IMG/VR virus record: IMGVR_UViG_3300020442_000005
Coordinates: 124,001 to 188,000 of that record
Length of the DNA: 64,000 nt
Strand: one strand, 5' to 3'
Notes under the pieces: generated by a model
Databases searched by the model: none
Told to the model about the DNA's origin: nothing
What the model saw: only the letters and a program-made list of their open reading frames with translations
Part shown: positions 9,186 through 54,960 of the stretch, one piece after another
Layout of the letters: the number at the start of each line of letters is the position of its first letter
How positions within the stretch are numbered: the stretch's first letter is position 1
Program-made: the position numbers and the translations under genes

Positions 9186-9581
9186 ATGAAAATTACAAAA
9201 AGACAACTTAAAAAAATTATTAAAGAAGAATACTCGCGGTTAAAGCAACAGGGTCTGATTACAGAAACGAGGATGTCATCAGGCAGATTAATTGTTAGTC
9301 AAGTTAATCAGCTTAAGCAAGCATATTTTATTCTAGATCCTGAAAGAAATTACGATCGGCAGTCTATAATAGAACAACAAAAAGTAGTTGAAAGACTTAA
9401 ATCAGAAATGAATCCACGAGATTTTAAAATTGCATCACGGATGGCAGATATATATGTTGAATACTTAGGAACTGATTTTGGAGGCGGTGGCAGGATGACG
9501 CCATACGAAGAGGCGTTGTTTGACGAGGCCGAAGCGCTTGGATCTAAGATTGGTGTATCTGCTCAAGTATTATTCAGGTAA
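9186..9581 (+). CDS. Leader-family protein, long leader (MKITKRQLKKIIKEEYSRLKQQGLITE)
   Basis: Start reassigned from 9174 to the ATG at 9186, where the leader begins. Confidence 0.75.
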   Translation: MKITKRQLKKIIKEEYSRLKQQGLITETRMSSGRLIVSQVNQLKQAYFILDPERNYDRQSIIEQQKVVERLKSEMNPRDFKIASRMADIYVEYLGTDFGGGGRMTPYEEALFDEAEALGSKIGVSAQVLFR

Positions 9582-9591
9582 GGACACCAAA

Positions 9592-9816
9592 ATGAAAATT
9601 ACAAAAAGACAGTTAAGACAGATTATCAAAGAAGCTACAAGCAAGGACCGGCTTGATTACGAGGCAGGTATTGACATGGGTTTTTCTGATTACAATAGAG
9701 ATATTAGAGATCGTGATTTATCAAAGCATAGTGAATCATTTCGCAAAGGCTATAGATATGGCTATAGCCAAGCAATGCGAATGGCTCAAGACTTTGATGA
9801 TGGTAATCCGTACTAA
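9592..9816 (+). CDS. Leader-family protein (MKITKRQLRQIIKEA) with a short Y/G-x-x-x-G-repeat cargo
   Basis: Start reassigned to ATG 9592 (SD AAGGA); contains DYEAGIDMGF and FRKGYRYGY. Confidence 0.75.
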   Translation: MKITKRQLRQIIKEATSKDRLDYEAGIDMGFSDYNRDIRDRDLSKHSESFRKGYRYGYSQAMRMAQDFDDGNPY

Positions 9817-9825
9817 GAGACTTTC

Positions 9826-10386
9826 GTGAAAATTACAAGACGTCAGATTAGACATGTTATCATGGAAGCATTACAACCAAAAATGTTACCTGATGGTTGG
9901 AAAATGCAGATACATGCTGGTGATTCTCTAAGTGCTGAGGGTCATTCTTTACTAGTGGTCCTTCTAAACAGTAACGGAAGAACTATAGGAAAAGTCGGCG
10001 CTGATAGGCATTGGACCGATAACCGTTGTATTGCAGACGTGTTTGAGGTTACAGGATCTGAAGTTCGTGGTGGTTATGGACCAACACTATATGATGTTGC
10101 AATAGAGTGGGCAACACTGAATGGTCTTGGATTGGTAGCAGACCGCTCAGGTGTGTCTGCAGAAGCAGAAAGAGTATGGCAAAAATATCTTACAGCCAGG
10201 CCCGATGTATCAGCTCACCGGTTACCTGATGGATATTGTGTTGGGCCCGAGGCAGAGTATGGCGGCGGAGAATGGTATCTTCACAGATACACAAAAGAGG
10301 AAAACCTAATTCCTGCTATGGCTAGATTTGGTCAGCTAGAAATAATATATGACGATGAAATTGAGGACATGAATCTGTACATGTAG
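9826..10386 (+). CDS. Leader-family protein (MKITRRQIRHVIMEA) with a GNAT-like acetyltransferase cargo
   Basis: Acetyl-CoA-binding-like motif EVRGGYGPTLYDVAIEWA followed by VSAEAERVWQKY. Confidence 0.6.
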   Translation: MKITRRQIRHVIMEALQPKMLPDGWKMQIHAGDSLSAEGHSLLVVLLNSNGRTIGKVGADRHWTDNRCIADVFEVTGSEVRGGYGPTLYDVAIEWATLNGLGLVADRSGVSAEAERVWQKYLTARPDVSAHRLPDGYCVGPEAEYGGGEWYLHRYTKEENLIPAMARFGQLEIIYDDEIEDMNLYM

Positions 10387-10399
10387 TCCTTAAATTAAT

Positions 10400-10428
10400 T
10401 TATAAAAACAAAATATATTTGGTATAAT
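10400..10428 (+). promoter_or_regulatory. Sigma70-like promoter TTATAA-N17-TATAAT
   Basis: Exact 17-bp spacing; same class as the 12 other sites in the window. Confidence 0.6.
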
Positions 10429-10447
10429 GTCTGCGTAACCAATAATT

Positions 10448-10509
10448 ATGATTAAGCCCCTAGCATGGACATAAGGCGGACCCCACACGCTCGCTAGGGA
10501 ATCATGTGG
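10448..10509 (+). ncRNA. Candidate structured 5' leader RNA
   Basis: Nested stems ATGATT/AATCAT and CCCTAGC/GCTAGGG; the GC-rich loop contains CCACA, complementary to downstream TGTGG. Confidence 0.45.
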
Positions 10510-10545
10510 ACAAGTAATCTCAAACAAACTTTAAGGAGAAAAATT

Positions 10546-11049
10546 ATGCCAAAAGTAATCGTAACCGATACCAAGGGACTTCATCAAGTTACCGGTACAG
10601 GTGTTGAAGGCTTGGAAGCCATTAAATTTAGTAGCAAAATTGCAGTTGGAGTTACCCAAACAAATTATGATACAGCAGCAATTTCAATTCCTGCGAATGC
10701 TCTGATCACTGATTTGGGTTATATTTGTGTCGACGCGCTTGATGCAAATACATCCACAACATTGACTTTCTCATTTGGTACCGCAGCTGGAGGCGCTCAG
10801 TTAGTGACCGCAACACAGCTTAACCAAACAAATACTGATATCGCTGCAGGCGTTACACAGTCAATTCAGCTTGGAAACATACCTCACGCATCAGGTGCGG
10901 CGATTCCTTATAAGGCTGGTGCTGCATATTTTAGCGCAACTGCAAGAGACATATTCATGCGTGTAACCGTTGGTGGCGCTAACATGTCGAATGCCGGATC
11001 AGTTATTGCTTTTGTTAAATACTGTATAGTGCCAAGCGCATCATTGTAA
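10546..11049 (+). CDS. Putative capsid decoration/structural protein (beta-sandwich-like)
   Basis: Start reassigned to ATG 10546 (SD AAGGAG). Ala/Thr/Gly-rich with ISIPANALITD; lies between the capsid and neck genes. Confidence 0.55.
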   Translation: MPKVIVTDTKGLHQVTGTGVEGLEAIKFSSKIAVGVTQTNYDTAAISIPANALITDLGYICVDALDANTSTTLTFSFGTAAGGAQLVTATQLNQTNTDIAAGVTQSIQLGNIPHASGAAIPYKAGAAYFSATARDIFMRVTVGGANMSNAGSVIAFVKYCIVPSASL

Positions 11050-11071
11050 TAGAACAATAAAGTAACAACAT

Positions 11072-11104
11072 GCCACCCTTCCTTGATTGGTTGGGTGGTT
11101 TTTG
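11072..11104 (+). terminator. Probable rho-independent terminator
   Basis: GCCACCC...GGGTGGT followed by Ts. Confidence 0.7.
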
Positions 11105-11173
11105 TTAGATTTTATAAAAGTAAAACATACTTATAAAAGATAGCGTTTAATATACTCAGAACAGGAGAGAGAA

Positions 11174-11449
11174 ATGGCTACATCAAAAAAGACAACTAAG
11201 GCTGAGACCGTTGCTGCTCACGGACACGCTGAGCTCGAAGCAAAAGTCGCTGGATTAGAAAAGTTAGTTGCAGAACTTAAAAAAGAATTAAAAGAGCATT
11301 GCGCAAAATCCGAAAAAGAACATAAGGCTTTAGCTGACAAGTGTGATGCATGCTGCGAAGCAAAAGTTTCTGCTAGTGCTGCTGATCCGCGGGTTGATGC
11401 AATGTGGAAATGGCTGAGAAAAGACCGAATTTTCCGCTCAGAAAACTAA
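11174..11449 (+). CDS. Small coiled-coil protein with a Cys cluster (CDACC)
   Basis: SD AGGAG; late-type motif at 11127. Confidence 0.65.
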   Translation: MATSKKTTKAETVAAHGHAELEAKVAGLEKLVAELKKELKEHCAKSEKEHKALADKCDACCEAKVSASAADPRVDAMWKWLRKDRIFRSEN

Positions 11450-11482
11450 TAATAATCACCAGCCATGTGTAAACAATACAGG

Positions 11483-11522
11483 ATATCGGCCATAATGGCC
11501 GATATTTTTTTTTATTTTTTTT
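11483..11522 (+). terminator. Rho-independent terminator
   Basis: Perfect inverted repeat ATATCGGCCAT-A-ATGGCCGATAT followed by long T runs. Confidence 0.85.
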
Positions 11523-11646
11523 AATTTAGGTTAATGGCGTGTGGCGTGTAAGTTTTATTGGTGAAAGTTTATCCTAATAGAAACTAGTTCAAGGTTGTTT
11601 GGGTTTTATACACATAATTATAAACGAACATGAACGGAGATAAAGC

Positions 11647-12819
11647 GTGGCCACATTTACAAACACAGTAGATCCAACTCCTTTTGGGATATTTGATTCT
11701 GATACAGATTTTCAATCCGATGCAGATTCAATGATTACATTTGTAAAAAGAAAGCTAGGTGATGACGTCCTAAGCGTTGAGTTGACCTCCAAGCAAATAT
11801 GGATGTGTTTTGAGGAATCTGTTTTCGAATACAGCAAATACATAAACGAGTATATGACTAAGTCGCAGCTTGGTAATCTTATGGGAATGGCAACCGGCTC
11901 TCTTTCCGGTTCAGAAAATAAATTACCTCGAGAGACATTAGAGTTTCTTATGCGAAAAGCCGAACCGTATGCTTCGCACGCGGCACTCGGAGGGTCTCAC
12001 AACATAATCTCCGGATCTATTACGTTAACAGGATCCCAGCAAGACTATGATATCCATACAGATCTTCTTAATGGAGACGGCGATTCAATATATTCCGCAC
12101 AATCCGCTGGCTCAAAAACAAAACTTCGTATATTTGACATTTATCATTTTTCAGCTCAGGCAGCTTATAGATTTTTTGATACAACGTCTGCTATAAATTA
12201 CTTGAATAACGAGTTTTCTTTTGAGTCTTTTACTCCGGAAACTGTGTTCTATGTCCTGCCTGTATTTGAGGATGTATTACGACAACAGCAGATGGATACA
12301 TCTAACAGAGTGCGAAGATCACAGTATACCTACGAACTGATAGGCACAAAACTACGCATATTTCCAAAGCCAACTGCACGAGTTAATGGCCAAAAGCTTT
12401 GGGTGCGCGTAGGATATGCTATGGATGGTCTAAATCCAGCATATCAAGATGATACTATTTTTGGGGTATCGGGACCACAAAACGTACCATTTGGAAATAT
12501 TGAATATGCAAAAATTAATTCAATGGGCAAACAGTGGATCCGCCAGTTTACTTGCGCATTGGCAAAAGAAGTGCTAGGGCAGGTTAGAGGAAAATTCGGA
12601 TCTGTGCCAATACCCAATGGCGACGTATCGTTAAACGGTGGCGACCTAAAATCAGAGTCTTCAAGCGAACAAGAACGATTACGCACGGAGTTAAAAGAAA
12701 TGTTAGATGGTCTCACGTACGACAAGCTGCTTGAAGCACAAGCAAATGAAGCTGAGACATTGACAAGATTGTTAAAGTTAGTTCCTATTCCATTCGGTAA
12801 GTCAATAATGATAGGATAG
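11647..12819 (+). CDS. Neck/head-completion protein, gp13-like
   Basis: Motifs FVKRKLGDDVLSVELT and WIRQFTCALAKEVLGQVRGKFGSVPIPNGDVSLNG. Confidence 0.85.
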   Translation: MATFTNTVDPTPFGIFDSDTDFQSDADSMITFVKRKLGDDVLSVELTSKQIWMCFEESVFEYSKYINEYMTKSQLGNLMGMATGSLSGSENKLPRETLEFLMRKAEPYASHAALGGSHNIISGSITLTGSQQDYDIHTDLLNGDGDSIYSAQSAGSKTKLRIFDIYHFSAQAAYRFFDTTSAINYLNNEFSFESFTPETVFYVLPVFEDVLRQQQMDTSNRVRRSQYTYELIGTKLRIFPKPTARVNGQKLWVRVGYAMDGLNPAYQDDTIFGVSGPQNVPFGNIEYAKINSMGKQWIRQFTCALAKEVLGQVRGKFGSVPIPNGDVSLNGGDLKSESSSEQERLRTELKEMLDGLTYDKLLEAQANEAETLTRLLKLVPIPFGKSIMIG

Positions 12820-12829
12820 GAGACTATAC

Positions 12830-13474
12830 ATGGCAAGATTATTTATAACAGCAAGAGAAATCGATTTTATTTCTGACATAACAAAAGAACTTACAAAAGA
12901 TATAATCGGTCAAGTGATATACTACTACAAACCTCGTGTAGATTTATCAAATTCCAACAACGTATATGATGAAATGACGGAAAGGGTGTTTGATCCACCA
13001 GTAGAAATAGATTGTACGGTTCAATGGAATCCATCGGAAAAAACAACGGATCGATATGGCCACCAGTCGCTTTCATCAATTGAAATATATCTACACTATC
13101 GAGATTTATTAGACCGTGGACTAGTCGTTGAGGAGGGTGATTTCTTTCAATTCGGCGACACATTCTACGAAATGACGACCGTCAATCGTGATAAGATTAT
13201 GTTTGGACAAGTTGAACATATAACCGGTTACAAAATAGTTGCCAAGCAAGCAAGAAAAGGACTGATTGATAAACCTGTTAACGGACCAACCGGTGAGCAA
13301 TTTACAGATGCCGGATCCGTGCAAGATACATTCGCACAACAGCGCGGTGACGTATCTAAAGGTGACAAAAGACAACTGGTGTCTGATGGTGTACTAGATA
13401 GCCCGATCGGAAACGCTCAGACGGTACGAAAGGACGGTAGTGCAAAGTCTTCATTCTATGGAGATGAATCATGA
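12830..13474 (+). CDS. Neck/head-closure protein, gp14-like
   Basis: Follows gp13; motifs VYDE...FDPPVEI and VEEGDFFQFG. Confidence 0.75.
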   Translation: MARLFITAREIDFISDITKELTKDIIGQVIYYYKPRVDLSNSNNVYDEMTERVFDPPVEIDCTVQWNPSEKTTDRYGHQSLSSIEIYLHYRDLLDRGLVVEEGDFFQFGDTFYEMTTVNRDKIMFGQVEHITGYKIVAKQARKGLIDKPVNGPTGEQFTDAGSVQDTFAQQRGDVSKGDKRQLVSDGVLDSPIGNAQTVRKDGSAKSSFYGDES

Positions 13475-14631: not shown

Positions 14632-14674
14632 TCCAGAAAACATATTTAATAAAGAACAATAGGAGATTATTCAA

Positions 14675-18022: not shown

Positions 18023-18042
18023 GAATAACAGGAGAAACTTAA

Positions 18043-45062: not shown

Positions 45063-45683
45063 ATGCATTGGACAACCAACATCGATCCAAAAGTAAGAGA
45101 ACTAGAATTACGACACAACCCTGTGATGATACGAGTTAATAAATTCACAGAGGAAAGCGCCGCTGAATTTGCAACAAAAATGGCTATGGCACATAACACT
45201 GGACAATCTGTTATCCCGGTCGTTATTGATTCATATGGCGGACAGGTATACAGTCTTATGAGTATGATAAGTTCTATAAATGCCTCAGAAATCCCGGTAG
45301 CAACTATTGTAGAAGGAAAAGCAATGTCCTGTGGAGTAATATTGTTTTCATGCGGCCACGAAGGATTAAGATTTGTCACTCCAGAAGCTACTTTGATGAT
45401 TCACGATGTATCTTCGGGTGCGTTCGGAAAAAACGAGGAAATTCAAGCATCCGCAAAAGAAACAAACCGACTCAATAAAATGATTTATACTATTCTTGCT
45501 GATAACTGCAAAAAACCACGTGATTATTTTACGAAAGAAGTAAAAAGAAGAGGCCGCGCGGATTGGTATGTAACTCCAAACAAAGCTGTGAAAATGGGTT
45601 TAGCAGATCACGTGGGGCTTCCTAAACTTCAAATTGACGTCGACGTACAAATTAATTTAGCAATCCCAGATAAAGATGCATAA
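45063..45683 (+). CDS. clpP: ClpP-family protease
   Basis: Motifs IDSYGG, AMSCG (catalytic Ser), LMIHD (His) and DWY...AVKMGLAD. Confidence 0.88.
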   Translation: MHWTTNIDPKVRELELRHNPVMIRVNKFTEESAAEFATKMAMAHNTGQSVIPVVIDSYGGQVYSLMSMISSINASEIPVATIVEGKAMSCGVILFSCGHEGLRFVTPEATLMIHDVSSGAFGKNEEIQASAKETNRLNKMIYTILADNCKKPRDYFTKEVKRRGRADWYVTPNKAVKMGLADHVGLPKLQIDVDVQINLAIPDKDA

Positions 45684-45706
45684 TTAATAACAATGGAGTT
45701 ATTCGT

Positions 45707-46171
45707 ATGTCGACATCAATTTTAAAATGGGTTCACATGCACAAAGCATACGTGGAGTGGTTTCACTCCGCGCACTTGTTATCAAAGGGATCAAGTTTTG
45801 CTGGTGACCATGTAAATCTTTATGGAAAAATATACCAAGAAGCTTTTGAGCAATACGACGGTATTATAGAACGTGTGATTGGTATTACAAACAACGAAGA
45901 TTGCGCCTGTCCATCTAGTATCAATATGGGTGCATTGGGTATTTTACAAAAGTACCCATCTCCATCAAACGTTCCTGCCTTGAATATTGCTACGTCTGCA
46001 TTGCAGCTCAACAAAGACTATTGTCATTTTTTGAATGACCTTGTTTTAAATCTTAGGCAATCAGGAAAAATTACTTTGGGAACAGAAGATTTAATCGCTG
46101 GAACATGTAATACTATTGAAGGGTATACTTATTTGTTGCAGCAACGCGTCAAAGAATCAATTGGAGTTTAA
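45707..46171 (+). CDS. Dps/ferritin-like protein
   Basis: HSAHLLSKGSSFAGDH...Y...YDGIIER matches the Dps ferroxidase signature; late-type motif at 45680. Confidence 0.75.
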   Translation: MSTSILKWVHMHKAYVEWFHSAHLLSKGSSFAGDHVNLYGKIYQEAFEQYDGIIERVIGITNNEDCACPSSINMGALGILQKYPSPSNVPALNIATSALQLNKDYCHFLNDLVLNLRQSGKITLGTEDLIAGTCNTIEGYTYLLQQRVKESIGV

Positions 46172-46172
46172 A

Positions 46173-46574
46173 ATGAAAATATCAAAAAGACAACTTAAGA
46201 GAATCATCAGAGAAGAATACTCACGCCTCAAGAGTCAAGGACTTATCAACGAAATGTCGGGTGTTGCATTTCCAGATCCGGAATTAGAGCAAGATACTCC
46301 GTATGATCGACTTATGGATGGTGCAGAAAATGAACCATACGATGGATACGTAGAAAAAATGGCACTTGCCCATGTTGAGAGCCAAGCTGGTAGATTAAAC
46401 TTTGATGAATATGCAGACTTTGCTTGGGATTATGGATACCGAACTGATGACGACTTAGATCAACTTGAAGAATGGTGGGAAGCAGCAATCGAGGAAAGTC
46501 GTGGTTATTCCTTCCGCGATTCTTTTGGCGATGGATATGGCCCTGGAGAGCGAAGACCGACAAGGCGAAGATAA
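46173..46574 (+). CDS. Leader-family protein, long leader (MKISKRQLKRIIREEYSRLKSQGLINE), acidic cargo
   Basis: Start reassigned to ATG 46173 (SD GGAG); late-type motif at 46125. Confidence 0.75.
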   Translation: MKISKRQLKRIIREEYSRLKSQGLINEMSGVAFPDPELEQDTPYDRLMDGAENEPYDGYVEKMALAHVESQAGRLNFDEYADFAWDYGYRTDDDLDQLEEWWEAAIEESRGYSFRDSFGDGYGPGERRPTRRR

Positions 46575-46951
46575 TGAAAATTACAAGAAGAAAATTAAAG
46601 CAGATTATCGAATCCGTTATGAACGAAGCTGTTCAAGATCCAGAATATGACAGAGAATATGACCTTGTTCAAAATAACATTAAAACACAACGTGGTTTTC
46701 TAGGATTTGCAATGCGAAGTTTGGAATCTAGTTATGGAAATCGATTTTATAATCATGGAAGGGGCAACATTGGAATATATCTTACACTTATAGGACAACA
46801 CGTAAGAGATGGACAAGACTCAAGAGGTGGCACCGTCGAAGGTCATATCGCATCAATAGAAGGCAAGCTCGCAGAATATCCCGATCTTCTCACACCAGCA
46901 GGGCGAGGACGACTGGATGCGTTGCTGGACCACTTAAAACAAAACTATTAA
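46574..46951 (+). CDS. Leader-family protein (MKITRRKLKQIIESVMNEA)
   Basis: Start reassigned to the TAATG overlap at 46574. Confidence 0.75.
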   Translation: MKITRRKLKQIIESVMNEAVQDPEYDREYDLVQNNIKTQRGFLGFAMRSLESSYGNRFYNHGRGNIGIYLTLIGQHVRDGQDSRGGTVEGHIASIEGKLAEYPDLLTPAGRGRLDALLDHLKQNY

Positions 46952-46965
46952 TCAGGGGAAAACGA

Positions 46966-47232
46966 ATGAAAATTACAAGAGCAAAATTAAAGCGGATTAT
47001 TCGTGAAGAAAAAGCACGCATTTTCGAGATGCATCACGGGCGTCCTCATGGAGATTTGGATAGTCTCGTTGAAGACACTCTTGAATATATTTCAGATGGT
47101 GCCTTTTCTAATGGTATGCAGATAGTACAATATGTTCGAGATGCAGGTCGCGATTATGGCCTTTCTGCAAGTGATCAGGATAAAGCAATTGCAAGAATTA
47201 TTAACGGTATGATGGCTGGCCCAAGATTTTAG
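46966..47232 (+). CDS. Leader-family protein (MKITRAKLKRIIREEKARIFE)
   Basis: Shared leader; small helical cargo. Confidence 0.75.
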   Translation: MKITRAKLKRIIREEKARIFEMHHGRPHGDLDSLVEDTLEYISDGAFSNGMQIVQYVRDAGRDYGLSASDQDKAIARIINGMMAGPRF

Positions 47233-47241
47233 GAAAATAAA

Positions 47242-47757
47242 ATGAAAATATCAAAAAGACAGCTTAAGAAGATAATACAAGAAGAATACATCGCCTTGAA
47301 AAGACAGGGTTTAATTACTGAATACGGTCTTGGCGATGAGTTTGACGGAATGCGCAATCCAGGCAGACGTGCACAAGATAGATCTATACCCGGAAGTATT
47401 GCTCGGGTTGATTGGATTAAACTCCACCATGACCCTTATTATGATAATAACCCACCAGAATGGCTCGGAAACCCAAAAGAAGAGTTGGATGCATTCCTTG
47501 ACTTAATAATTTCTGCCGAGCTTGAGAATGTACTGGATGGCTTAGGAATGTCAGAACTATATAGACCAGCGATGGATGAGATCGACTACGAAGGAATTTT
47601 CCACGGCGGCAAAACAATCATGAAAATACTTGAAAATGTTTTTCCTTATTCTGATGGTTCATATTTATACAGAGCCTTAGAAAGATGGGCTGCTGAGCAT
47701 ACAAGTTCAGGAAAAATACATTCTGGCGAAATCCGGTATACCCAGCCGCAGAGATGA
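47242..47757 (+). CDS. Leader-family protein, long leader (MKISKRQLKKIIQEEYIALKRQGLITE)
   Basis: Shared leader; unique cargo. Confidence 0.75.
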   Translation: MKISKRQLKKIIQEEYIALKRQGLITEYGLGDEFDGMRNPGRRAQDRSIPGSIARVDWIKLHHDPYYDNNPPEWLGNPKEELDAFLDLIISAELENVLDGLGMSELYRPAMDEIDYEGIFHGGKTIMKILENVFPYSDGSYLYRALERWAAEHTSSGKIHSGEIRYTQPQR

Positions 47758-48161
47758 TAAACGTAATGAGCAAGATATTAACAAAAGCCTTTTGGGATTC
47801 TGTATGGAATTGGTGTAAGATCAACTGGAAATTTCTTGTTGGTTTTGCAATACCCTGTATTTTGCTGATTGCGGTTAATAGACGTAAGGCATTCAAGTTG
47901 CTTGAAAAAGGCATTGAGTTCCGTAATCAACAGTTAGATGTAGCACAGAGAGCTTCGGATCTCGAGTCCGATGGGAAGGTCAAGAACGCTAAGGAATTTG
48001 CTGATCGTGTAGAGGAGGTGACAACCAGACACGAGGAGGCTCTTCGCAAGCTTGGTGAAAACGTCCAAGACCGGCGTGAAGAATTGGGTGGGTCTGATGC
48101 TGCTGTTGTAACGGACGCTTTGGCGGATCGCTTTAATTTGAAGAATGGAGACAACAAGTGA
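47754..48161 (+). CDS. Membrane-anchored coiled-coil protein, possible i-spanin
   Basis: N-terminal TM segment (FLVGFAIPCILLIAV) followed by a coiled coil; near the endolysin. Confidence 0.45.
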   Translation: MINVMSKILTKAFWDSVWNWCKINWKFLVGFAIPCILLIAVNRRKAFKLLEKGIEFRNQQLDVAQRASDLESDGKVKNAKEFADRVEEVTTRHEEALRKLGENVQDRREELGGSDAAVVTDALADRFNLKNGDNK

Positions 48162-48835
48162 ATGCTAAAAAACTAAGAAAAATTATCGCTGAAGAGTTAG
48201 CGGTTATCTCAAAATCAGCAATTGACGACACTGTAATGAATATTCTAAGTGATGAAGGTGGCGCAGCTGGACTCGATCCAATCGAAAAAGCTTTAAAAGA
48301 TTTAGAAAACGATCAGATGGAACTTCCGGAAGAAAGTATCGAAGAATTAATATCAAGTGTTGCAGGCGTTAAACGCCATCGCGATGGTGACTATATAGAC
48401 ACAACTCAACTTGAAGGAAAAGCATATTTTACAAAACGCAGATTAAATCAGATAGTCAAAGAAGAATACAAACGCTTAAAGGATGAGGGACTAATATCAG
48501 AAACCTTTAAAAGTAAGTCAACTTTTGGCGGCAGATCCCCAGAATATAAAATGCGAATGCCTAAGTTGTACGGTACACAAATGCAAGATGCAAGACGGGG
48601 TAACCGACTACCACCAGAAAGTTCAAATTGGTTTAGATTTGCAAAACATTTGGATATCGGTATACTAGATCTAGATGAAGTAGCACATGAACTTCGTTTT
48701 AAAAATTTTGAACACATGGACGCAGCTGTGTCACCACGTGGTCTAAATCAATCAGAAGCTGATCGAGTTGCTGATATAATGTATGATTTATACATGATTG
48801 AAGATATCGATGTATACGACGCTTTGGAGAAATAA
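48158..48835 (+). CDS. Leader-family protein with two leader copies
   Basis: N-terminal MNAKKLRKIIAEE and internal FTKRRLNQIVKEEYKRLKDEGLISE. Confidence 0.7.
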   Translation: MNAKKLRKIIAEELAVISKSAIDDTVMNILSDEGGAAGLDPIEKALKDLENDQMELPEESIEELISSVAGVKRHRDGDYIDTTQLEGKAYFTKRRLNQIVKEEYKRLKDEGLISETFKSKSTFGGRSPEYKMRMPKLYGTQMQDARRGNRLPPESSNWFRFAKHLDIGILDLDEVAHELRFKNFEHMDAAVSPRGLNQSEADRVADIMYDLYMIEDIDVYDALEK

Positions 48836-48838
48836 AAA

Positions 48839-49366
48839 ATGAGTATATCAAAAAGAGAAATCAGGCGAATAGTAGAAAAATCATCTTGTGGTCGGCGCCG
48901 TGTACGAGAAATGGACGATGCGGCACCTGGAATCGGTACGTCATACGAAGACGTTCGTGAACTAGCCAAGTATCACGCTCTTAATGGCGACAAAGACCAA
49001 ATGCTTTATCGCGATAACCCTGATTACAAAGATGCATATGATGAAATGACAATGAAGGAATCTAAAATAAATTTACGACTTAGAACAAAAATTAGACGTC
49101 TTACCGAATCGATGAAAAACCTTTACGGTGACATACAGAATGAAATACTGTATATTGGCCAAGAGCAGGGCGGTGAAATAGTTGTGCAAGATGTCGTTGA
49201 TTATTTGCAAAATTATGCAAATGACCCATTGGGAGATCCGCGAGCTGATTATGTTAGTAGCATGCCATATGAAGAAGTACGGCAAATAATGTTTGATATG
49301 GTTGACGCCGGAATGCTTACCGATGGCTATGAAGATTTCTTCTATGTCCATCCGGACTACATGTAA
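48839..49366 (+). CDS. Leader-family protein (MSISKREIRRIVE) with an internal leader-like segment and a winged-helix-like C-domain
   Basis: Internal LRTKIRRLTES; C-domain IQNEILYIGQEQGGEIVVQDVVDYL. Confidence 0.65.
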   Translation: MSISKREIRRIVEKSSCGRRRVREMDDAAPGIGTSYEDVRELAKYHALNGDKDQMLYRDNPDYKDAYDEMTMKESKINLRLRTKIRRLTESMKNLYGDIQNEILYIGQEQGGEIVVQDVVDYLQNYANDPLGDPRADYVSSMPYEEVRQIMFDMVDAGMLTDGYEDFFYVHPDYM

Positions 49367-49416
49367 TATGCGGCTGCAGGCCCGTTAGAGACTGCAAAAT
49401 ATAAAAGGAAATAAAA

Positions 49417-50313
49417 ATGGCTGTTGACAAAGAGTTTTATAACGAAGCATCGGCTTCAAAGCTTGGCTGGGAACCTGAATGGTTTATTCCCGGCCATAAT
49501 CTTTTTGATAAAAAATTAACAAAAGCTATCAAAGAATGGCAAACCACACGTGGTCTGTATGCTGACGGCATGTGCGGACCTGGTACGTTTCGACATATCA
49601 ATGCTGAAATAGAATCACAGCGTGAGCTAGACGCTTTAGGTTGGGTATCAGATTCTTCAGATGTAATTTGGTGGGGAGATAAGCCCATAAAGATCGACTG
49701 GCCTTCTAACAAGGTACACACGTTTAAGGATGAAGGTTTTCCTTATCCTATTAGCAAGGGCGTTACAAAAAACTCTCGTAAAAGAAAGATTAATTCTTTC
49801 GTGACGCATTGGGACGTATGCCTTAGTTCCATGAGCTGCGCAAAAGTTCTAGCCAAGCGTAATGTATCCGTGCATTTCTGTATTGACAACGATGGCACGA
49901 TCATTCAGCTTCACGATCTTAATGACTCTTGTTGGCATGCTGGCAACAGCAAAGTAAACCGTACAAGTGTCGGCGTTGAGATTTCAAACGCATATTATCA
50001 AAAATATCAAGGATGGTATAAAAAGAACGTAGGTAAGGAAAGACCAATCATGTCTGGTGCGTTAGCACAGAATAAACCTCTTAAAGACTTTACTTGGTTC
50101 TACCCAGAACAGATTGAGGCTCTTAAAGCCTTATACAAAGCAATCCACGAGGGATGTGATGTGCCTCTTCAGTCTCCGGCAAATAAGTGGGCTTTCGATA
50201 GCTCGGCAGCTGGTGGAAGCTGGAAAGGTTTTATGAATCACTTTCACTGTTCAAAAAAGAAGATTGACTGTGGTGGATTAGATATTGAAAAACTTTTAGA
50301 AGAAATTAAATGA
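49417..50313 (+). CDS. Endolysin: peptidoglycan-binding domain plus N-acetylmuramoyl-L-alanine amidase (Amidase_2)
   Basis: Motifs AIKEWQTTRGLYADGMCGPGT, THWD, SVHFCIDNDGTIIQ, CWHAG, SVGVEI and NHFH...KIDCG. Confidence 0.88.
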   Translation: MAVDKEFYNEASASKLGWEPEWFIPGHNLFDKKLTKAIKEWQTTRGLYADGMCGPGTFRHINAEIESQRELDALGWVSDSSDVIWWGDKPIKIDWPSNKVHTFKDEGFPYPISKGVTKNSRKRKINSFVTHWDVCLSSMSCAKVLAKRNVSVHFCIDNDGTIIQLHDLNDSCWHAGNSKVNRTSVGVEISNAYYQKYQGWYKKNVGKERPIMSGALAQNKPLKDFTWFYPEQIEALKALYKAIHEGCDVPLQSPANKWAFDSSAAGGSWKGFMNHFHCSKKKIDCGGLDIEKLLEEIK

Positions 50314-50885
50314 AAATTACAAGAAGACAACTAAGAAGAATTATCAAAGAAGCAAGTGCTTCGTACGGTGAAAGATTGTATCGCGATATTGTTGGACACG
50401 AATTCCAACCGGATTATGTGTATCGACCGGTCCAACAGATGATGGGCCAGGCCCAACCTCAAAATCTAATAAAGTATCGTTCAGTCAACGAGGTAATGAA
50501 AGCAATTGCAAATTACTATCGTAAGAAATATGGACCAGATGATGCAAAAGCTTACATTCGTGCTAATCCAACCATTATAGATTTTTTAGAAAATGATTCT
50601 GAAGCTTTAAAAAGTATGCATCCCAGACGTTTTGGAGGAGATTCGTTTGGAAGACCTGGAATCTTATATTACAGCCCCTCTGAAATTAGCCTTTCATGGG
50701 GTAACGTGGATGCAGTTGCTGAGGCTGGTCAAGATTTCCAACGGCTCCCGGGAGACCTTGCACAGATTGCAGAACAATTATACAATGAAGATCGATTACT
50801 TCCCGCGTTTTTACACTTGATCACCGGTACACAGCCAAGAAATCATGTCAATCGCGCCAATGGTTACGGAAGTATTTCAAACTAA
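50310..50885 (+). CDS. Leader-family protein (MKITRRQLRRIIKEA)
   Basis: ATGA-type overlap with the endolysin stop; shared leader. Confidence 0.75.
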   Translation: MKITRRQLRRIIKEASASYGERLYRDIVGHEFQPDYVYRPVQQMMGQAQPQNLIKYRSVNEVMKAIANYYRKKYGPDDAKAYIRANPTIIDFLENDSEALKSMHPRRFGGDSFGRPGILYYSPSEISLSWGNVDAVAEAGQDFQRLPGDLAQIAEQLYNEDRLLPAFLHLITGTQPRNHVNRANGYGSISN

Positions 50886-50902
50886 TAAGGAAGATAAACA
50901 AA

Positions 50903-51760
50903 ATGAAAGCAAACTCTGCGCGCAAGTTAAGACATTTGGTTCGTCGTATCATCGTAGAATCACAAAGCTTGGATAATCAGATTCTCAGTAGATCTGATTA
51001 TATGCGTGGATTGATGTTATTTATTGAAAATAACCCGGGAACTACTACAGACGAAATGTTTGATTCTCCGGTTGCAAATGCAATTATTCCAATTGGTATA
51101 AGAGAAAGAGCAATATTGCTTTGGGTAAAGAAGCTAATCAAGGATGGTTTTATTATTTCAAAAAGATATAGGCTTTATTCAACTGGCAAAGCAGATTATG
51201 TAAATCACAATGTTGTTTTAGAAAACGTTATTATGGAAAGCGCCAAGTTCTCAAGTTATGATGCTTTCACAAGACAGGAAAATCTTGACCTTCGAATGAT
51301 GGAACATGATAAAGGTCATATCGATCTAGAAAACAATTCTGCAATTGCGAAAGCTTTTCAAGTATATTCGGAAACAACAACAGTTTCTTTGTTTCGCGGA
51401 ATATACAACACCGAAACACGGATGCTTTCAAATATGCAGCCAGGCGACACATTCCAATTTGGTCGTGTAACTTCACTATCAGAAAACTTTGAAATTGCAA
51501 AAAAGTTTGCAATAAATAAAAAAATCGTTGAGCTAGTACCAGGCACGAAAGGTTGTTTTAGTTTTGTCGATTTTCTGGTCGACTACTATGATGGATGGAA
51601 GCGAAAGGATCCTATGGACTACGAAATGCAGGATGGTGAATGGCGCAAAGGATCGGCGGAAAGAGAGGCCGAATGGTTCGTATCCGGGGATACACAATTT
51701 CAGCTTTTAGACGTTGCAGAAAGAGATGGAATGACCGTGTACAAGATCAAAACTCTTTAA
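50903..51760 (+). CDS. Leader-family variant carrying a winged-helix-like domain and an ADP-ribosyltransferase domain
   Basis: Leader RKLRHLVRRIIVES. R-S-E ART motifs: LFRG, VTSLSEN..IAKKFA and EREAEW. Confidence 0.65.
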   Translation: MKANSARKLRHLVRRIIVESQSLDNQILSRSDYMRGLMLFIENNPGTTTDEMFDSPVANAIIPIGIRERAILLWVKKLIKDGFIISKRYRLYSTGKADYVNHNVVLENVIMESAKFSSYDAFTRQENLDLRMMEHDKGHIDLENNSAIAKAFQVYSETTTVSLFRGIYNTETRMLSNMQPGDTFQFGRVTSLSENFEIAKKFAINKKIVELVPGTKGCFSFVDFLVDYYDGWKRKDPMDYEMQDGEWRKGSAEREAEWFVSGDTQFQLLDVAERDGMTVYKIKTL

Positions 51761-51768
51761 AATAATAC

Positions 51769-51797
51769 GTATAAATACTCTTACTAATGGTTATAAT
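51769..51797 (+). promoter_or_regulatory. Promoter GTATAA-N17-TATAAT
   Basis: 17-bp spacing; upstream of the methyltransferase. Confidence 0.65.
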
Positions 51798-51820
51798 AGA
51801 GAAAATCATTAGGAGTTTTT

Positions 51821-52786
51821 ATGATCAATTATCTTTATCGGCCAACAAACCTGCAAGTCTCCAGTAAAATCGTTCATCAAGGCGATAGGGTGCCATTTAA
51901 GTGGGCCGGCGCTAAAAATAGGATGTTTAAAAAATACATTTCAACTGGATTCTTTCCGGCAAAGCAACCAAAAATATTTGTTGACATGTTTGCAGGTACT
52001 GGTGCGGTTGGACGTTGGATAGCTCAAAATTATCCAAATACGACGGTAGTTCTAAACGAAACTTGTGGTGAATTAGTTGGTATGTATAAACAGCTTAAGA
52101 CCAAGAATTATAATGCGTTCATTGCAGCATATAGTAAGCATGTTAAAGCATATGCAAGTTATTCTACTGTTGAAGATCGTAAAAAATATTATTACGGTGT
52201 TAGAAACCAATACGCGTTATCCTATCAAAACATGACTCCAGCAGAAGAAGCTGCAGCTCTTTTCTATATGCTACAAACGGGCTTCAATGGAATATGGCAG
52301 ACATCAGACAACTTTAACAATAGATACGCGTCGCCCGCTGGACTAATGACTTGGAAGCCTTCTGGCGATCTATTTGATATTAATAGAATAAAAAAATATT
52401 CAGAGTTTATTGATCGCTGTGTATTACTTAATGATGACTTTGAAGCAACTTCGTGCTTTATGGGTTCCGATACCTGGTTTTATGCTGATCCACCATATCG
52501 TGTTTCAAAAGCAAAATATGCATCAGCAGGTGATTTTACAAACAACGATCAAATTAGATTATGTAATTTTCTTAATGATGCACACAAGGCAAATGATATG
52601 TGTTCAATGAGCAACAGAGAAGATTCAGATAAGCAAATTGGAAAAGAAGTTGGTACAATAACTAAGGGTTGGTTTGCTGATAAATTTAACGATGACTGGA
52701 ATGTTTCGTATTATGATGTTAAATACACAGCTGGCCGACACAACTTAGGTCAAAAAGGAAAAGAAGTTCTTATTAAAAATTATTAA
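51821..52786 (+). CDS. DNA adenine methyltransferase, Dam/D12 class
   Basis: Motifs PFKWAGAK, DMFAGTG, GFNG and YADPPY. Confidence 0.92.
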   Translation: MINYLYRPTNLQVSSKIVHQGDRVPFKWAGAKNRMFKKYISTGFFPAKQPKIFVDMFAGTGAVGRWIAQNYPNTTVVLNETCGELVGMYKQLKTKNYNAFIAAYSKHVKAYASYSTVEDRKKYYYGVRNQYALSYQNMTPAEEAAALFYMLQTGFNGIWQTSDNFNNRYASPAGLMTWKPSGDLFDINRIKKYSEFIDRCVLLNDDFEATSCFMGSDTWFYADPPYRVSKAKYASAGDFTNNDQIRLCNFLNDAHKANDMCSMSNREDSDKQIGKEVGTITKGWFADKFNDDWNVSYYDVKYTAGRHNLGQKGKEVLIKNY

Positions 52787-52797
52787 ATGGAGTCAAA

Positions 52798-53550
52798 GTG
52801 ATATTTGATCTTTACGGTGATGGAATAGGCACAGTAGAATACGTACAACACATGGGCGAAGACATAACTATTGTGAACAGCGCAAGAGTTAGCTTTGGAA
52901 AACACAAGGAGACGATGGATGAAAAAGACAGAAAACTTATCAGATATCTCATCAAGCACAGACACACATCAACCCTCGAACACAATATTGCTACGTTTAG
53001 GTTTGTGGTACCTCTGTATGTGCGTAGCCAGCACCATCGTCATAGAACTTGGTCTTATAACGAAATTAGTCGTCGATATACTGCAGAAAATTTGAGATTT
53101 TATGAGCCACAAAAATTTAGAACACAACACAAATCAAACCGACAAGCCTCCAATCATGATGAGTTGGATCCGATTATGGGATACTTTGAAGATGGCGGAC
53201 CTAACTACGCAAGCGCATCTATTAGAAGTCATCATCGCAACAGTGTATGTTTATACAACTCATTAATGGAAAAGGGCGTATGCAGGGAACAGGCAAGAGG
53301 CGTTTTGCCACAGAACATGTACACCGAATATTATGGAACAGCTAACTTAAATAATCTTCTAAAATTTTGCGGGTTGCGTCTTCATGATGGTGCGCAGCTT
53401 GAAATACAAAAAGTTGCTGAGGGTATAATTGGCATATGCAAAAATCTTTGGCCTATCACAATCGAAGCATACATTGCTAGTTTGGAAGACCGAGCACTAG
53501 CTGAAAGGCTAGAAAATATCGAGATTATTAAGGCCAAACCGCATAATTAG
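52798..53550 (+). CDS. thyX: Flavin-dependent thymidylate synthase
   Basis: Motifs IVNSARVSF, HTSTLEH, RHRTWSYNEISRRY, EQARGVLP and AQLEI. Confidence 0.95.
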   Translation: MIFDLYGDGIGTVEYVQHMGEDITIVNSARVSFGKHKETMDEKDRKLIRYLIKHRHTSTLEHNIATFRFVVPLYVRSQHHRHRTWSYNEISRRYTAENLRFYEPQKFRTQHKSNRQASNHDELDPIMGYFEDGGPNYASASIRSHHRNSVCLYNSLMEKGVCREQARGVLPQNMYTEYYGTANLNNLLKFCGLRLHDGAQLEIQKVAEGIIGICKNLWPITIEAYIASLEDRALAERLENIEIIKAKPHN

Positions 53551-53608
53551 AAATAGAGTTTTCTTTTGTTGTGCGTTGCGTATCTACATTTATTTTAGGG
53601 GATATCCT

Positions 53609-53932
53609 ATGACCGGTGATAATAATGGATGGAATGAATATTCACGTATGGTTTTAAAAGAGCTCGAAGTATTGGCCGCTGGAATCAATGGCTTAAAAAC
53701 AGAAATCGAAGGTTTAAAACGTGAGATTACAGAGATGAGAGCAAGAGAAGACAAAGTTTCAGAATTGGTTGATTGGAAAAAAAGAGTCGATGAAGTCGCG
53801 TCACCATCTCAATTGAGAGACTTACAGGACCAAGTATCAGCTCTTCAAGACTTTAAAATAAAGGCAACCACAGCATTTATTGCAGCCCAGATGGTCGTTG
53901 CAGGTGCTTTTACATTGTTAAAGCTAATCTGA
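53609..53932 (+). CDS. Coiled-coil protein with a C-terminal TM segment (possible lysis/holin-like)
   Basis: Start reassigned to ATG 53609; C-terminal hydrophobic AFIAAQMVVAGAFTLL; late-type motif at 53543. Confidence 0.5.
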   Translation: MTGDNNGWNEYSRMVLKELEVLAAGINGLKTEIEGLKREITEMRAREDKVSELVDWKKRVDEVASPSQLRDLQDQVSALQDFKIKATTAFIAAQMVVAGAFTLLKLI

Positions 53933-53982
53933 CACATACTTATATACTGAAATGCTAAATCGATATTTTTAAAGGAGCTATC

Positions 53983-54279
53983 ATGAGAATATCAAAAAGA
54001 CGCTTACGCATGATTATTAAAGAAGAATATACAAAACTTAAAAGACAAGGGTTGTTGAGTGAATCTAGATTCAGCAGCAGAGGATCTTCGTCTAGATTAA
54101 CAGTATCTCAGCTCAGAAGACTGATCAGAGAAGCGCTCGATGAAGAAGATGATTCTGAAGAGGAAGATGATAAACCAGGTCCGGGTGAGGACGCTGAGGG
54201 CCGAATGGGTGCTGGTGATCCTAAAAACGCAAAGAAAAACCCAAGAAAGAAAAAACCCAAAGCGCAAGACATGAGATAA
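53983..54279 (+). CDS. Leader-family protein with a tandem double leader
   Basis: MRISKRRLRMIIKEEYTKLKRQGLLSE followed by RLTVSQLRRLIREALDEE; late-type motif at 53936. Confidence 0.75.
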   Translation: MRISKRRLRMIIKEEYTKLKRQGLLSESRFSSRGSSSRLTVSQLRRLIREALDEEDDSEEEDDKPGPGEDAEGRMGAGDPKNAKKNPRKKKPKAQDMR

Positions 54280-54301
54280 ATCCTTCAATCCGGAGAAACC
54301 A

Positions 54302-54652
54302 ATGAGAATATCAAAAAGACATCTTAAAAGAATCATCAAAGAAGAATATACAAAATTAAAACGCCAAGGACTTATTAGTGAAGGTTTTCGCGATATGCGC
54401 GGTGGCCATGGCCGTCAAATGAGCTTGCAAGATTACGAAGAGCAAGACCCAAACATGATGGAAGACAATTATGACGCTGCAGTGGAAGAGTGTATGGCTG
54501 CTATTCCAGGAATGATGAAAAAGATTATTTCAATGGGAATGGGACACACTGTAATGAATGACATTTATCATATCTGCGCGCCAATCTGCAAAAGCTACGG
54601 CGTTGATGCTGACGAAGTTTCAGAAGAAATTATGGAAAGACTTGGATACTAA
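54302..54652 (+). CDS. Leader-family protein, long leader (MRISKRHLKRIIKEEYTKLKRQGLISE)
   Basis: Shared leader; SD GGAG. Confidence 0.75.
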   Translation: MRISKRHLKRIIKEEYTKLKRQGLISEGFRDMRGGHGRQMSLQDYEEQDPNMMEDNYDAAVEECMAAIPGMMKKIISMGMGHTVMNDIYHICAPICKSYGVDADEVSEEIMERLGY

Positions 54653-54654
54653 AG

Positions 54655-54960
54655 ATGAAAGTGACCAAGAGACAGATAAAGCGTATTATTCGTGAAGAAT
54701 ACAATAAGATGCGTAGAGAACAGCGTATTGTTACTGAAAGCTATTTTAAAAACCTTTTAGTAGAAATAGAGGATCATCTTTTGTATTTGGCTGACATGCA
54801 TGCCGGTAGTGTACCTATTGAAAAGGTTGTACGGCCATTAAAAAGAAAGTTTAAGCATTTCTCTGGAATGACAAGGGCTACAGTTTTTGCAGAGCTTATG
54901 GAAATGCAGCCCTATTTTAGCGTGATACGGATTGATGGTGACAACATAATTTCTTACTAA
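54655..54960 (+). CDS. Leader-family protein (MKVTKRQIKRIIREEYNKMRREQRIVTE) with a winged-helix-like cargo
   Basis: Shared leader; helix-G-strand-helix-helix-hairpin pattern in the cargo. Confidence 0.72.
   Translation: MKVTKRQIKRIIREEYNKMRREQRIVTESYFKNLLVEIEDHLLYLADMHAGSVPIEKVVRPLKRKFKHFSGMTRATVFAELMEMQPYFSVIRIDGDNIISY

What the first reader, a model, noticed from the sequence alone, without database searches (positions are those of the whole stretch)
9186..54960. Two leader subtypes: a short form ending IIxE-A and a long form EEYxxLKxQGLIxE with a second cut site
Seen: the short type occurs at 8764, 9592, 9826 and 50310. An intermediate EEKARI(L/F)E type occurs at 8445 and 46966. The long type ends GLITE, GLINE, GLITE, GLLSE and GLISE at 9186, 46173, 47242, 53983 and 54302, with an internal copy in 48158 and a looser copy in 54655. 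Subtypes are mixed across loci up to about 45 kb apart. Inference: the extension adds a helix and a second protease site, perhaps changing copy number per head, binding partner or order of release.
Basis: partly seen in the sequence, partly recalled or inferred. Interest (0 to 1): 0.6.

Follow-up and report, generated by a model that had tools for sequence, protein, structure and literature searches.

The report
Capsid-targeting leader family, three lengths
An uncultured 273-kb T4-like giant phage puts one conserved basic leader peptide, in short, middle and long versions that each end in a T4-type protease motif, on about 28 unrelated small proteins, most likely to load them into its capsid.

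Summary
There are at least three length classes, not two: cut motif at Glu14, Glu21/22 or Glu27. They recur across phages and also differ inside the shared core.

The cargo parts are unrelated to each other and mostly acidic. Three orthologous cargo pairs carry different leader classes, so class is not tied to cargo.

The phage has a T4 gp23-type capsid protein and a gp21-type (Peptidase_S77) prohead protease. Its capsid protein has an invariant L-[RK]-E where T4 gp23 is cut. The leader resembles the N-terminus of a conserved head-module protein (hhalign P = 1e-6). In a relative, leader genes lie between portal and protease.

Best reading: a T4-style capsid targeting sequence, removed after hydrophobic-hydrophobic-x-Glu. 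Cleavage, packaging and any effect of leader length are untested. Whether the long form adds a cut or only moves it is open. This is a new variant of a known kind.

The parts
1400..2011 (+). Prohead protease, T4 gp21 family (Peptidase_S77); the enzyme proposed to cut the leaders
   Evidence: PF03420 E=8e-27; phrog_207 head maturation protease E=2e-49; PDB 5jbl T4 prohead protease E=3e-16. Has LLQE at residues 7-10.
2392..2838 (+). Conserved head-module protein whose N-terminus is leader-like (K-x-x-R-x-x-L-K-x-L-I-K-E, then LVE, LVE)
   Evidence: N-terminus conserved in 34 relatives (alignment A3). hhalign against leader profile A2: probability 91%, P=1e-6, leader residues 2-20 align with core residues 3-21. 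[LI]xE density 5.4 per 100 aa against a genome mean of 1.35.
4606..6345 (+). Scaffold-like 579-aa protein with long Asp/Glu tracts, directly upstream of the capsid gene; candidate docking partner of the basic leader (inferred)
   Evidence: Sequence. Lies in the position of T4 gp22. [LI]xE density 3.6 per 100 aa. No family hit.
6393..8372 (+). Major capsid protein, gp23 family, with predicted maturation cut after V-L-R-E59
   Evidence: PF07068 E=8e-76. Alignment to mature T4 gp23 places the cut region at about residue 56-60. L-[RK]-E is invariant in 80 of 80 homologues and the next residue varies.
8397..8431 (+). Terminator-like hairpin plus U-run between the capsid gene and the first leader gene
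   Evidence: Fold of 8373-8444: -29.4 kcal/mol, z=-4.05.
8445..8753 (+). Leader gene, intermediate class (leader nt 8445-8510)
   Evidence: (E=1.4e-9).
8764..9174 (+). Leader gene, short class (leader nt 8764-8805), basic cargo
9186..9581 (+). Leader gene, long class (leader nt 9186-9266). Its 75%-identical cargo orthologue P0002 has a short leader
   Evidence: (E=2.6e-11).
9592..9816 (+). Leader gene, short class (leader nt 9592-9633)
   Evidence: E=8e-12.
9826..10386 (+). Leader gene, short class (VIME-A; leader nt 9826-9867)
   Evidence: Weak GNAT hint only (E=0.15).
46173..46574 (+). Leader gene, long class (leader nt 46173-46253)
   Evidence: (E=2e-11).
46574..46951 (+).
   Evidence: E=3e-9.
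46966..47232 (+). Leader gene, intermediate class (leader nt 46966-47028)
47242..47757 (+). Leader gene, long class (leader nt 47242-47322). Eight orthologues all keep the long leader
48158..48835 (+). Fusion ORF: weak N-terminal leader plus an internal long leader (nt 48422-48502) with no start codon
   Evidence: Residues 92-224 are 50% identical to a stand-alone 137-aa gene of relative G002 (L085:13575), which has an intermediate leader. Internal hit E=0.004.
48839..49366 (+). Loose short leader (RRIVE). Its C-terminal domain is 88% identical to an L097 protein that has a long leader joined directly to it
50310..50885 (+). Leader gene, short class (leader nt 50310-50351)
   Evidence: E=3e-10.
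50903..51760 (+). Alt-like ADP-ribosyltransferase with a leader-like 19-residue N-terminal extension ending IIVE-S (judged by eye, below profile threshold)
   Evidence: phrog_832 RNA polymerase ADP-ribosylase E=2.9e-8. Atlas leads to ADPrib_exo_Tox/ModB at 0.83-0.84. The orthologue in G001 lacks the extension.
53983..54279 (+). Leader gene, long class (nt 53983-54063), plus a second short-type copy ending LIRE-A (nt 54094-54132)
   Evidence: i-E 9e-4.
54302..54652 (+). Leader gene, long class (leader nt 54302-54382)
54655..54960 (+). Leader gene, loose long form, 28 residues, ending IVTE (leader nt 54655-54738)
45063..45683 (+). ClpP-like protease at the conserved left border of the hypervariable leader locus (part of a rival reading)
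   Evidence: PF00574 E=1.5e-27. Same position in G001 and in L095.

Best explanation
The leader is this phage lineage's version of the T4 capsid targeting sequence (CTS).

Proposed mechanism:
1. A basic amphipathic helix (residues 2-14, net charge +4 to +6) docks the precursor onto the assembling prohead core. The likely partner is the very acidic scaffold-like protein. This step is inferred.
2. The gp21-type Peptidase_S77 protease then cuts after hydrophobic-hydrophobic-x-Glu and frees the cargo inside the head. This step is inferred from motif and homology.
3. The cargo is later ejected with the DNA. This step is inferred by analogy with T4 IPI-III and Alt.

The three classes differ in where the last such motif lies: Glu14, Glu21/22 or Glu27. 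The extensions look like a repeat of the core's L-[KR]-x-hydrophobic-hydrophobic-x-E module. They lengthen the same helix face by about two turns.

The classes are old, separate leader lineages. They are exchanged between cargo genes by recombination and are not tuned to a particular cargo. Two questions stay open: whether long leaders are cut twice (which would give smaller fragments that clear more easily, as proposed for other phage propeptides) or only at the distal site, and whether length changes loading.
For: Shown:
- A T4-type head module with a gp23-family capsid protein and an S77 protease.
- The leader sits at the exact N-terminus of about 28 ORFs here, 10-27 in relatives G001, G002 and G004, and 10 in the complete 191-kb G009.
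- 726 clusters at 50% identity match the long-leader profile. Of 144 of the 150 best hits examined, 126 have the match at residue 1.
- Cargo parts are unrelated: 11 homologous pairs among 125 proteins, none within this genome.
- All classes end in a hydrophobic-hydrophobic-x-Glu motif. For the long class, LIxE or LLxE was found in 110 of the 115 examined hits that match the long-class pattern.
- The capsid protein has an invariant L-[RK]-E at the place aligned to the T4 gp23 cut.
- The leader profile matches the N-terminus of a conserved head-module protein.
- Leader genes lie directly after the capsid gene here. In G009 they lie between portal and protease, where T4 has gp67/gp68.
- [LI]xE is enriched in the scaffold-like, core and protease proteins.
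- An Alt-like ADP-ribosyltransferase carries a leader-like extension. T4 Alt is a packaged, gp21-processed head protein (PMC9026906, PMC5694885).
- Cargo loci are hypervariable between relatives, as T4 IP loci are (PMC3012670).

Literature: gp21 cuts after L/I-X-E; the T4 CTS is 10 residues, with targeting in its N-terminal part and processing at residues 8 and 10 (PMC9026906). Multiple cuts within propeptides are known (PMC5694885).
Against: - There is no proteomic or biochemical evidence of packaging or cleavage, and no cultured phage with the family was found.
- The cargo is mostly acidic (79 of 97; 111 of 115 in metagenomes). The T4 internal proteins are basic (own knowledge).
- The leader is basic and 14-28 residues long. 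By eye it shows no similarity to the T4 CTS beyond the M-K start and the I-x-E end.
- No late-promoter signal was found.
- Most leader genes lie among metabolic or early-type genes rather than in the head module.
- Structure models were too poor to use.
Confidence: 0.6

Rival explanations
1. The long and intermediate extensions do not add a second cut. They move the single cut downstream. The first IIxE is kept only as part of the docking helix, because Glu at the next position blocks cleavage there.
For: The residue after Glu14 is always Glu in the 23 intermediate and 39 long leaders. It is Ala, Ser, Thr or Val in 32 of 35 short leaders, and A/Q/S/V/T at the capsid-protein site. In the T4 CTS, targeting and processing residues are separable (PMC9026906).
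Against: T4-type proteases show few determinants beyond P3 and P1 (PMC9026906). Multiple cuts in propeptides are common (PMC5694885). Glu14 stays invariant in long forms.
Confidence: 0.3
2. The leader is not removed. It is a working part of the mature proteins: a basic amphipathic helix for nucleic-acid, membrane or partner binding, shared by a family of small host-takeover proteins.
For: High hydrophobic moment (0.72, z=1.8) and charge of +4 to +6. No evidence of cleavage. Many of the genes sit among non-structural genes.
Against: - Class boundaries fall exactly on hydrophobic-hydrophobic-x-Glu.
- The leader resembles the N-terminus of a head-module protein.
- Leader genes occur inside head modules.
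- The cargo is unrelated and leaders are swapped among orthologues.
Confidence: 0.15
3. The leader is an N-terminal degradation tag read by the phage ClpP-like protease with a host unfoldase. It would time the removal of early proteins.
For: A ClpP-like gene (45063-45683) borders the hypervariable leader locus in this phage, in G001 and in L095. The tag is strictly N-terminal.
Against: - This reading does not explain the conserved Glu motifs, the match to the capsid-protein cut site, or the likeness to the head-module protein.
- No unfoldase or adaptor was seen next to the ClpP-like gene.
- Leader clusters elsewhere in the genome have no ClpP neighbour.
Confidence: 0.08
4. The conserved 5' gene end is kept for a DNA- or RNA-level role (a recombination handle for cassette exchange, or a translation-start optimum) rather than for the peptide.
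For: Whole leaders are exchanged between orthologous cargo. The start region is A-rich.
Against: Synonymous codons vary at invariant residues, and third-position identity is lower than at positions 1+2. Conservation extends over 27 codons in 726 diverged clusters.
Confidence: 0.05

Closest known systems
T4 internal proteins IPI, IPII, IPIII and their capsid targeting sequence
   Same: A short N-terminal peptide shared by otherwise unrelated, hypervariable small proteins. It ends in I-x-Glu and occurs in a phage with a gp21-type protease and a gp23-type capsid protein. The genes are scattered in several loci (PMC9026906, PMC3012670).
   Different: - Length is 14-28 residues in three or more classes, against 10 in T4.
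- The leader is strongly basic, and no sequence likeness to the T4 CTS is evident.
- There are about 28 genes per genome, against three.
- The cargo is mostly acidic rather than basic.
- Nothing has been shown experimentally.
T4 Alt, gp24, gp67/gp68 N-terminal propeptides
   Same: These are head proteins with 10-20-residue propeptides removed by gp21 (PMC5694885). Here an Alt-like enzyme and a conserved head-module protein carry leader-like N-termini, and in G009 leader genes sit at the gp67/68 position.
   Different: No homology to gp67/68 was detected. The leader-like extension of the Alt-like protein is below the profile threshold and is absent from its G001 orthologue.
Propeptides of phiKZ / 201phi2-1 / SPN3US ejection proteins
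   Same: Giant phages with many head-internal proteins cut after Glu. The paralogues gp53 and gp54 share an identical 15-residue N-terminus containing extra cut motifs, which was suggested to help clearance (PMC5694885).
   Different: Those propeptides are mostly over 100 residues, the motif is S/A-x-E, and no single leader is shared by dozens of unrelated proteins.
Encapsulin cargo-loading peptides (own knowledge)
   Same: One short conserved peptide directs diverse cargo into an HK97-fold shell.
   Different: Those peptides are C-terminal, are not cleaved, and bind the shell protein itself. No encapsulin is involved here.

Membership tests
T4-type capsid targeting sequence (gp21-processed N-terminal propeptide) | Short peptide at the very N-terminus, shared by otherwise unrelated small proteins | tested here: met
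T4-type capsid targeting sequence (gp21-processed N-terminal propeptide) | Peptide ends in L/I-x-Glu, the gp21 cleavage motif (PMC9026906) | tested here: met
   All three classes end in hydrophobic-hydrophobic-x-Glu.
T4-type capsid targeting sequence (gp21-processed N-terminal propeptide) | Genome encodes a gp21-family protease and a gp23-family capsid protein | tested here: met
   PF03420 and PF07068; PDB 5jbl. S77 is also present in the leader-bearing G008 and G009.
T4-type capsid targeting sequence (gp21-processed N-terminal propeptide) | Proteins are loaded into proheads and lose the peptide by proteolysis | not testable with these tools
   No cultured member was found. Only motif-level support exists, such as the capsid-protein site L-[RK]-E in 80 of 80 homologues.
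T4-type capsid targeting sequence (gp21-processed N-terminal propeptide) | Sequence similarity to the 10-residue T4 CTS | not tested
   No T4 IP sequence was fetched. The length (14-28 against 10, PMC9026906) and the basic charge differ.
T4-type capsid targeting sequence (gp21-processed N-terminal propeptide) | Cargo genes hypervariable between related phages | tested here: met
   The five-gene cluster after the capsid gene is absent from 78 of 80 related loci. The ClpP-amidase locus holds 7, 2 or 1 leader genes in three phages.
T4-type capsid targeting sequence (gp21-processed N-terminal propeptide) | Cargo are small basic DNA-associated proteins, as in IPI-III (own knowledge) | tested here: not met
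   Cargo net charge is negative in 79 of 97 proteins and in 111 of 115 metagenomic hits.
phiKZ/SPN3US-type ejection-protein propeptides | Long propeptide (mostly over 100 residues) cut at S/A-x-E (PMC5694885) | tested here: not met
   Leaders are 14-28 residues, with a hydrophobic residue at P3.
N-terminal degradation tag for a Clp protease | Recognition by an unfoldase or adaptor, followed by degradation | not testable with these tools
   Only adjacency of a ClpP-like gene in three genomes is seen.
Alt-type RNA polymerase ADP-ribosyltransferase (for 50903-51760 only) | Match to the family profile | tested here: met
   phrog_832 E=2.9e-8 over residues 112-273. No Pfam hit. Atlas scores of 0.83-0.84 are leads only.

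The most novel reading that the evidence does not exclude
The leader classes are a sorting code. Leader length would set which layer of the prohead core a cargo joins, and so its copy number and the order in which dozens of mostly acidic, possibly DNA-mimicking anti-defence proteins leave the capsid on infection. On this reading the freed basic leader peptides (+4 to +6) stay behind as counter-ions for the packed DNA.
Probability: 0.1. Interest if true: 0.75.

Novelty: new variant of a known kind. Interest (0 to 1): 0.5.

Why it matters
If the reading holds, about a tenth of the genes of a widespread group of uncultured giant T4-like phages encode proteins pre-loaded into the capsid. At least 726 distinct cargo families in metagenomes would then be flagged by one 14-28-residue tag. 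That would give a simple sequence rule for finding injected host-takeover and anti-defence proteins in metagenomes. It would also give a second, chemically different packaging tag beside the T4 CTS for loading foreign proteins into phage heads. Finally, the three leader lengths are a natural series for testing how propeptide length and the number of cut sites affect loading and release.

Tried and rejected
- Megablast of the head region against phage records: no match.
- tblastn of a long-leader protein against phage records: no match.
- Cultured MCP relatives (Flavobacterium phage immuto, Microcystis phage Mel-JY01, Rhodothermus phage RM378) have no convincing leader. The 484-kb uncultured LR756508 has weak N-terminal look-alikes.
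- Pfam and PHROGs gave nothing for the cargo parts except the Alt-like protein.
- AF2 of 50903-51760 (pLDDT 36) and of the 47242 orthologue alignment (pLDDT 45) were too poor, so no fold search was run.
- The T4 late-promoter word TATAAATA is not enriched (7 found against 5 expected).
- Sigma-70 and terminator consensus scans did not differ from shuffles.
- A word search restricted to the leader found only orthologues of that one gene.
- No paper holds the motif strings, and no paper describes such a family.
- By eye I read 45707-46171 as Dps-like. Pfam does not support this, so I dropped it.
- Complex prediction was not run. The docking partner is unknown, the candidate scaffold is long and low-complexity, and a blank result would say nothing.
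- The reads tools were not used. No genetic code other than table 11 was needed.

Full report
**What the window is.** The window is bases 124001-188000 of a 273,025-bp IMG/VR virus record, about 82% complete. It has about 40% G+C and nearly all genes on one strand. It encodes a gp23-family major capsid protein (6393-8372, PF07068, E = 8e-76). It also encodes a gp21-family prohead protease (1400-2011; PF03420 Peptidase_S77; phrog_207; PDB 5jbl, E = 3e-16). The nearest cultured capsid relatives are only 42-48% identical: Flavobacterium phage immuto, Microcystis phage Mel-JY01 and Rhodothermus phage RM378. At least 599 stretches of uncultured viral contigs encode a related capsid protein; the 80 loci kept are 61-88% identical. 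The phage is therefore an uncultured giant member of the distant T4 group.

**The observation.**
- A 22-residue profile scores the named copies at E = 1e-7 to 1e-12 against all six-frame ORFs of the genome. It finds about 28 copies genome-wide, always at a start codon except for the internal copy in 48158-48835.
- Loose copies sit at 48158 (N-terminus), 48839 and 50903. The 53983 protein carries a second, short-type copy at residues 38-50.
- Conserved residues use several synonymous codons, and third codon positions are less alike than first and second (0.62 against 0.76). So the peptide is under selection, not the DNA.

**The classes.** I classified 115 leaders from this genome and from related contigs.
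- Short: 35 leaders, motif ending at Glu14, next residue mostly Ala or Ser.
- Intermediate: 23 leaders, IIxEE[KY]xx, then hydrophobic-hydrophobic-x-E at about residue 22.
- Long: 39 leaders, IIxEEYxxLxxxGL[IL]xE ending at Glu27.
- Other: 18 leaders.
- Nine short leaders have another hydrophobic-x-Glu within residues 15-21, about one helical turn on.

So the series is graded and there are more than two types. The classes recur in phages whose capsid proteins are only 63-70% identical. They also differ inside the shared core. Position 9 is Arg in 29 of 35 short leaders but in 7 of 39 long ones (p = 3e-8). Position 5 is Arg in 16 of 35 short leaders and in 0 of 39 long ones. These tests ignore relatedness, but they show that the classes are distinct leader lineages and not one core with optional tails. 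The extension resembles a repeat of the core's second half: L-K-R-I-I-x-E against L-K-R-x-G-L-I-x-E. The profile similarity is only weak.

**Cargo.** After removal of the first 30 residues, only 11 homologous pairs remain among 125 proteins, and none within this genome. The leader is therefore a module on unrelated proteins. The cargo parts have no Pfam or PHROG family. Most are acidic (79 of 97; median net charge -7 to -10), whereas the leader carries +4 to +6.

In three cases orthologous cargo carries different classes:
- Window 9186 (long) against P0002 (short), 75% identical in the cargo.
- Window 48839 (loose short) against L097 (long).
- The distal part of 48158 (long) against a stand-alone G002 gene with an intermediate leader.

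In contrast, all eight orthologues of 47242 keep the long leader. The internal copy in 48158 has no start codon and is a gene fusion.

**Spread.**
- The relatives G002 (289 kb), G004 and G001 hold 27, 15 and 10 copies.
- The complete 191-kb G009 holds 10.
- A profile of the long leader finds 726 clusters at 50% identity among 1.84 billion proteins.
- Of 144 of the 150 best hits examined, 126 have the motif at residue 1. Of these, 115 match the long-class pattern, and 111 of those 115 have acidic cargo.
- No cultured phage has a convincing copy, and no paper holds the motif.

**Why a capsid targeting sequence.** T4 gp21 cuts after L/I-X-Glu. The T4 internal proteins share only a 10-residue N-terminal CTS that loads them into the prohead core and is then removed (PMC9026906, PMC3012670). 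Seven lines of evidence point the same way here:
1. The protease is of that family.
2. The capsid protein has V-L-R-E59 followed by Ala, six residues before the stretch that aligns with residue 11 of mature T4 gp23. L-[RK]-E is invariant in 80 of 80 homologues while the next residue varies. This motif, hydrophobic-hydrophobic-basic-Glu, is the leader's II[KR]E and the long leader's LI[KR]E.
3. A conserved head-module protein (2392-2838) has an N-terminus that matches the leader profile (hhalign probability 91%, P = 1e-6). It is followed by two more L-x-E motifs.
4. Five leader genes are inserted directly after the capsid gene, behind a strong terminator-like hairpin. L009 has one leader gene at the same spot and L012 has the start of one there at its contig end. 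In G009 two leader genes lie between portal and protease, where T4 has gp67 and gp68.
5. [LI]xE is two or more standard deviations above the genome mean in the scaffold-like, core and protease proteins.
6. The Alt-like ADP-ribosyltransferase at 50903-51760 (phrog_832, E = 2.9e-8) has a leader-like 19-residue extension ending IIVE-S that its G001 orthologue lacks. T4 Alt is a packaged, gp21-processed protein (PMC9026906, PMC5694885).
7. The leader loci are hypervariable between relatives. The stretch between the ClpP-like gene and the amidase holds 7, 2 or 1 leader genes in three phages.

**The extension.** Residues 2-14 have a high hydrophobic moment (0.72, z = 1.8). Tyr16 and Leu19 fall on the same face as Leu8, Ile11 and Ile12. 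After Gly23, Leu24 and Ile25 fall off that face. A low-confidence AF2 model shows a helix over residues 5-21.

Whether the first site is still cut is open. In long and intermediate leaders the residue after Glu14 is always Glu. In short leaders and in the capsid protein it is small or polar. Extra cuts in propeptides are known and are thought to aid clearance (PMC5694885). Effects on copy number, partner or release order remain speculation. The class swaps among orthologues argue against a cargo-specific role.

**Weak points.** There is no evidence of packaging or cleavage. The cargo is acidic, unlike the T4 internal proteins. The leader is unlike the T4 CTS in sequence and charge. No late-promoter signal was found. 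Most leader genes lie among non-structural genes. The rivals are an uncleaved functional helix, a Clp degradation tag (a ClpP-like gene borders one locus in three phages) and a DNA-level handle. All are less well supported but none is excluded.

**Verdict.** The finding is a new variant of the T4 capsid-targeting principle, seen only in uncultured phages. My confidence in the mechanism is 0.6 and my interest score is 0.5.

Noticed in passing
window 50903-51760; L092:10683-11507: Alt-like ADP-ribosyltransferase (phrog_832, E=2.9e-8). Arg, Ser-x-Ser and Glu-x-Glu motifs are visible by eye in both copies. Only the window copy has the leader-like N-terminal extension.
   Followed up: partly
window 48158-48835: In-frame fusion of two leader genes. 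The distal half is a separate gene in relative G002. If the leader is a cut signal, one precursor would yield two products.
   Followed up: partly
window 53983-54279: This protein has a long leader, then a second short-type leader copy ending LIRE-A at residues 38-50, then a very acidic tract and a basic tail.
   Followed up: partly
window 8373-8444: Strong terminator-like hairpin (-29.4 kcal/mol, z=-4.05) with a U-run directly after the capsid gene. It could lower expression of the leader genes that follow.
   Followed up: partly
window 45063-46171, and L092, L095: A ClpP-like protease gene and a conserved gene of about 150 aa form the fixed left border of the hypervariable leader locus in three phages. 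An amidase with a peptidoglycan-binding domain and a Dam-like methylase form the right side.
   Followed up: partly
window 6393-8372: The capsid protein is 659 aa. It aligns to T4 gp23 only at residues 66-124 and about 358-639, so it carries an insertion of about 230 residues of unknown fold.
   Followed up: no
all leader proteins: The cargo parts are overwhelmingly acidic (111 of 115 metagenomic long-leader proteins, median net charge -9), opposite to the basic leader. This hints at DNA-mimic or scaffold-like roles.
   Followed up: partly
L126:1501-1620 and L128:1501-1620 (LR756508.1, 484-kb uncultured phage): Weak leader look-alikes at ORF starts (M-[KR]-L-[ST]-E-R-x-L-[KR]-R-I-[IV]) occur in a huge phage whose capsid protein is 47% identical. 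The module may be older than this clade.
   Followed up: partly
genome position about 9300-9388 (outside the window; L116): The sequence just upstream of one leader gene looks like the 3' end of a tRNA gene. This was not checked with ARAGORN.
   Followed up: no
L120:922-1734 (G009): A 270-aa ORF has one leader at its start and a second at about residue 108 that begins with Met. Similar two-leader ORFs appear among the metagenomic hits. They may be merged gene calls or real tandem precursors.
   Followed up: no
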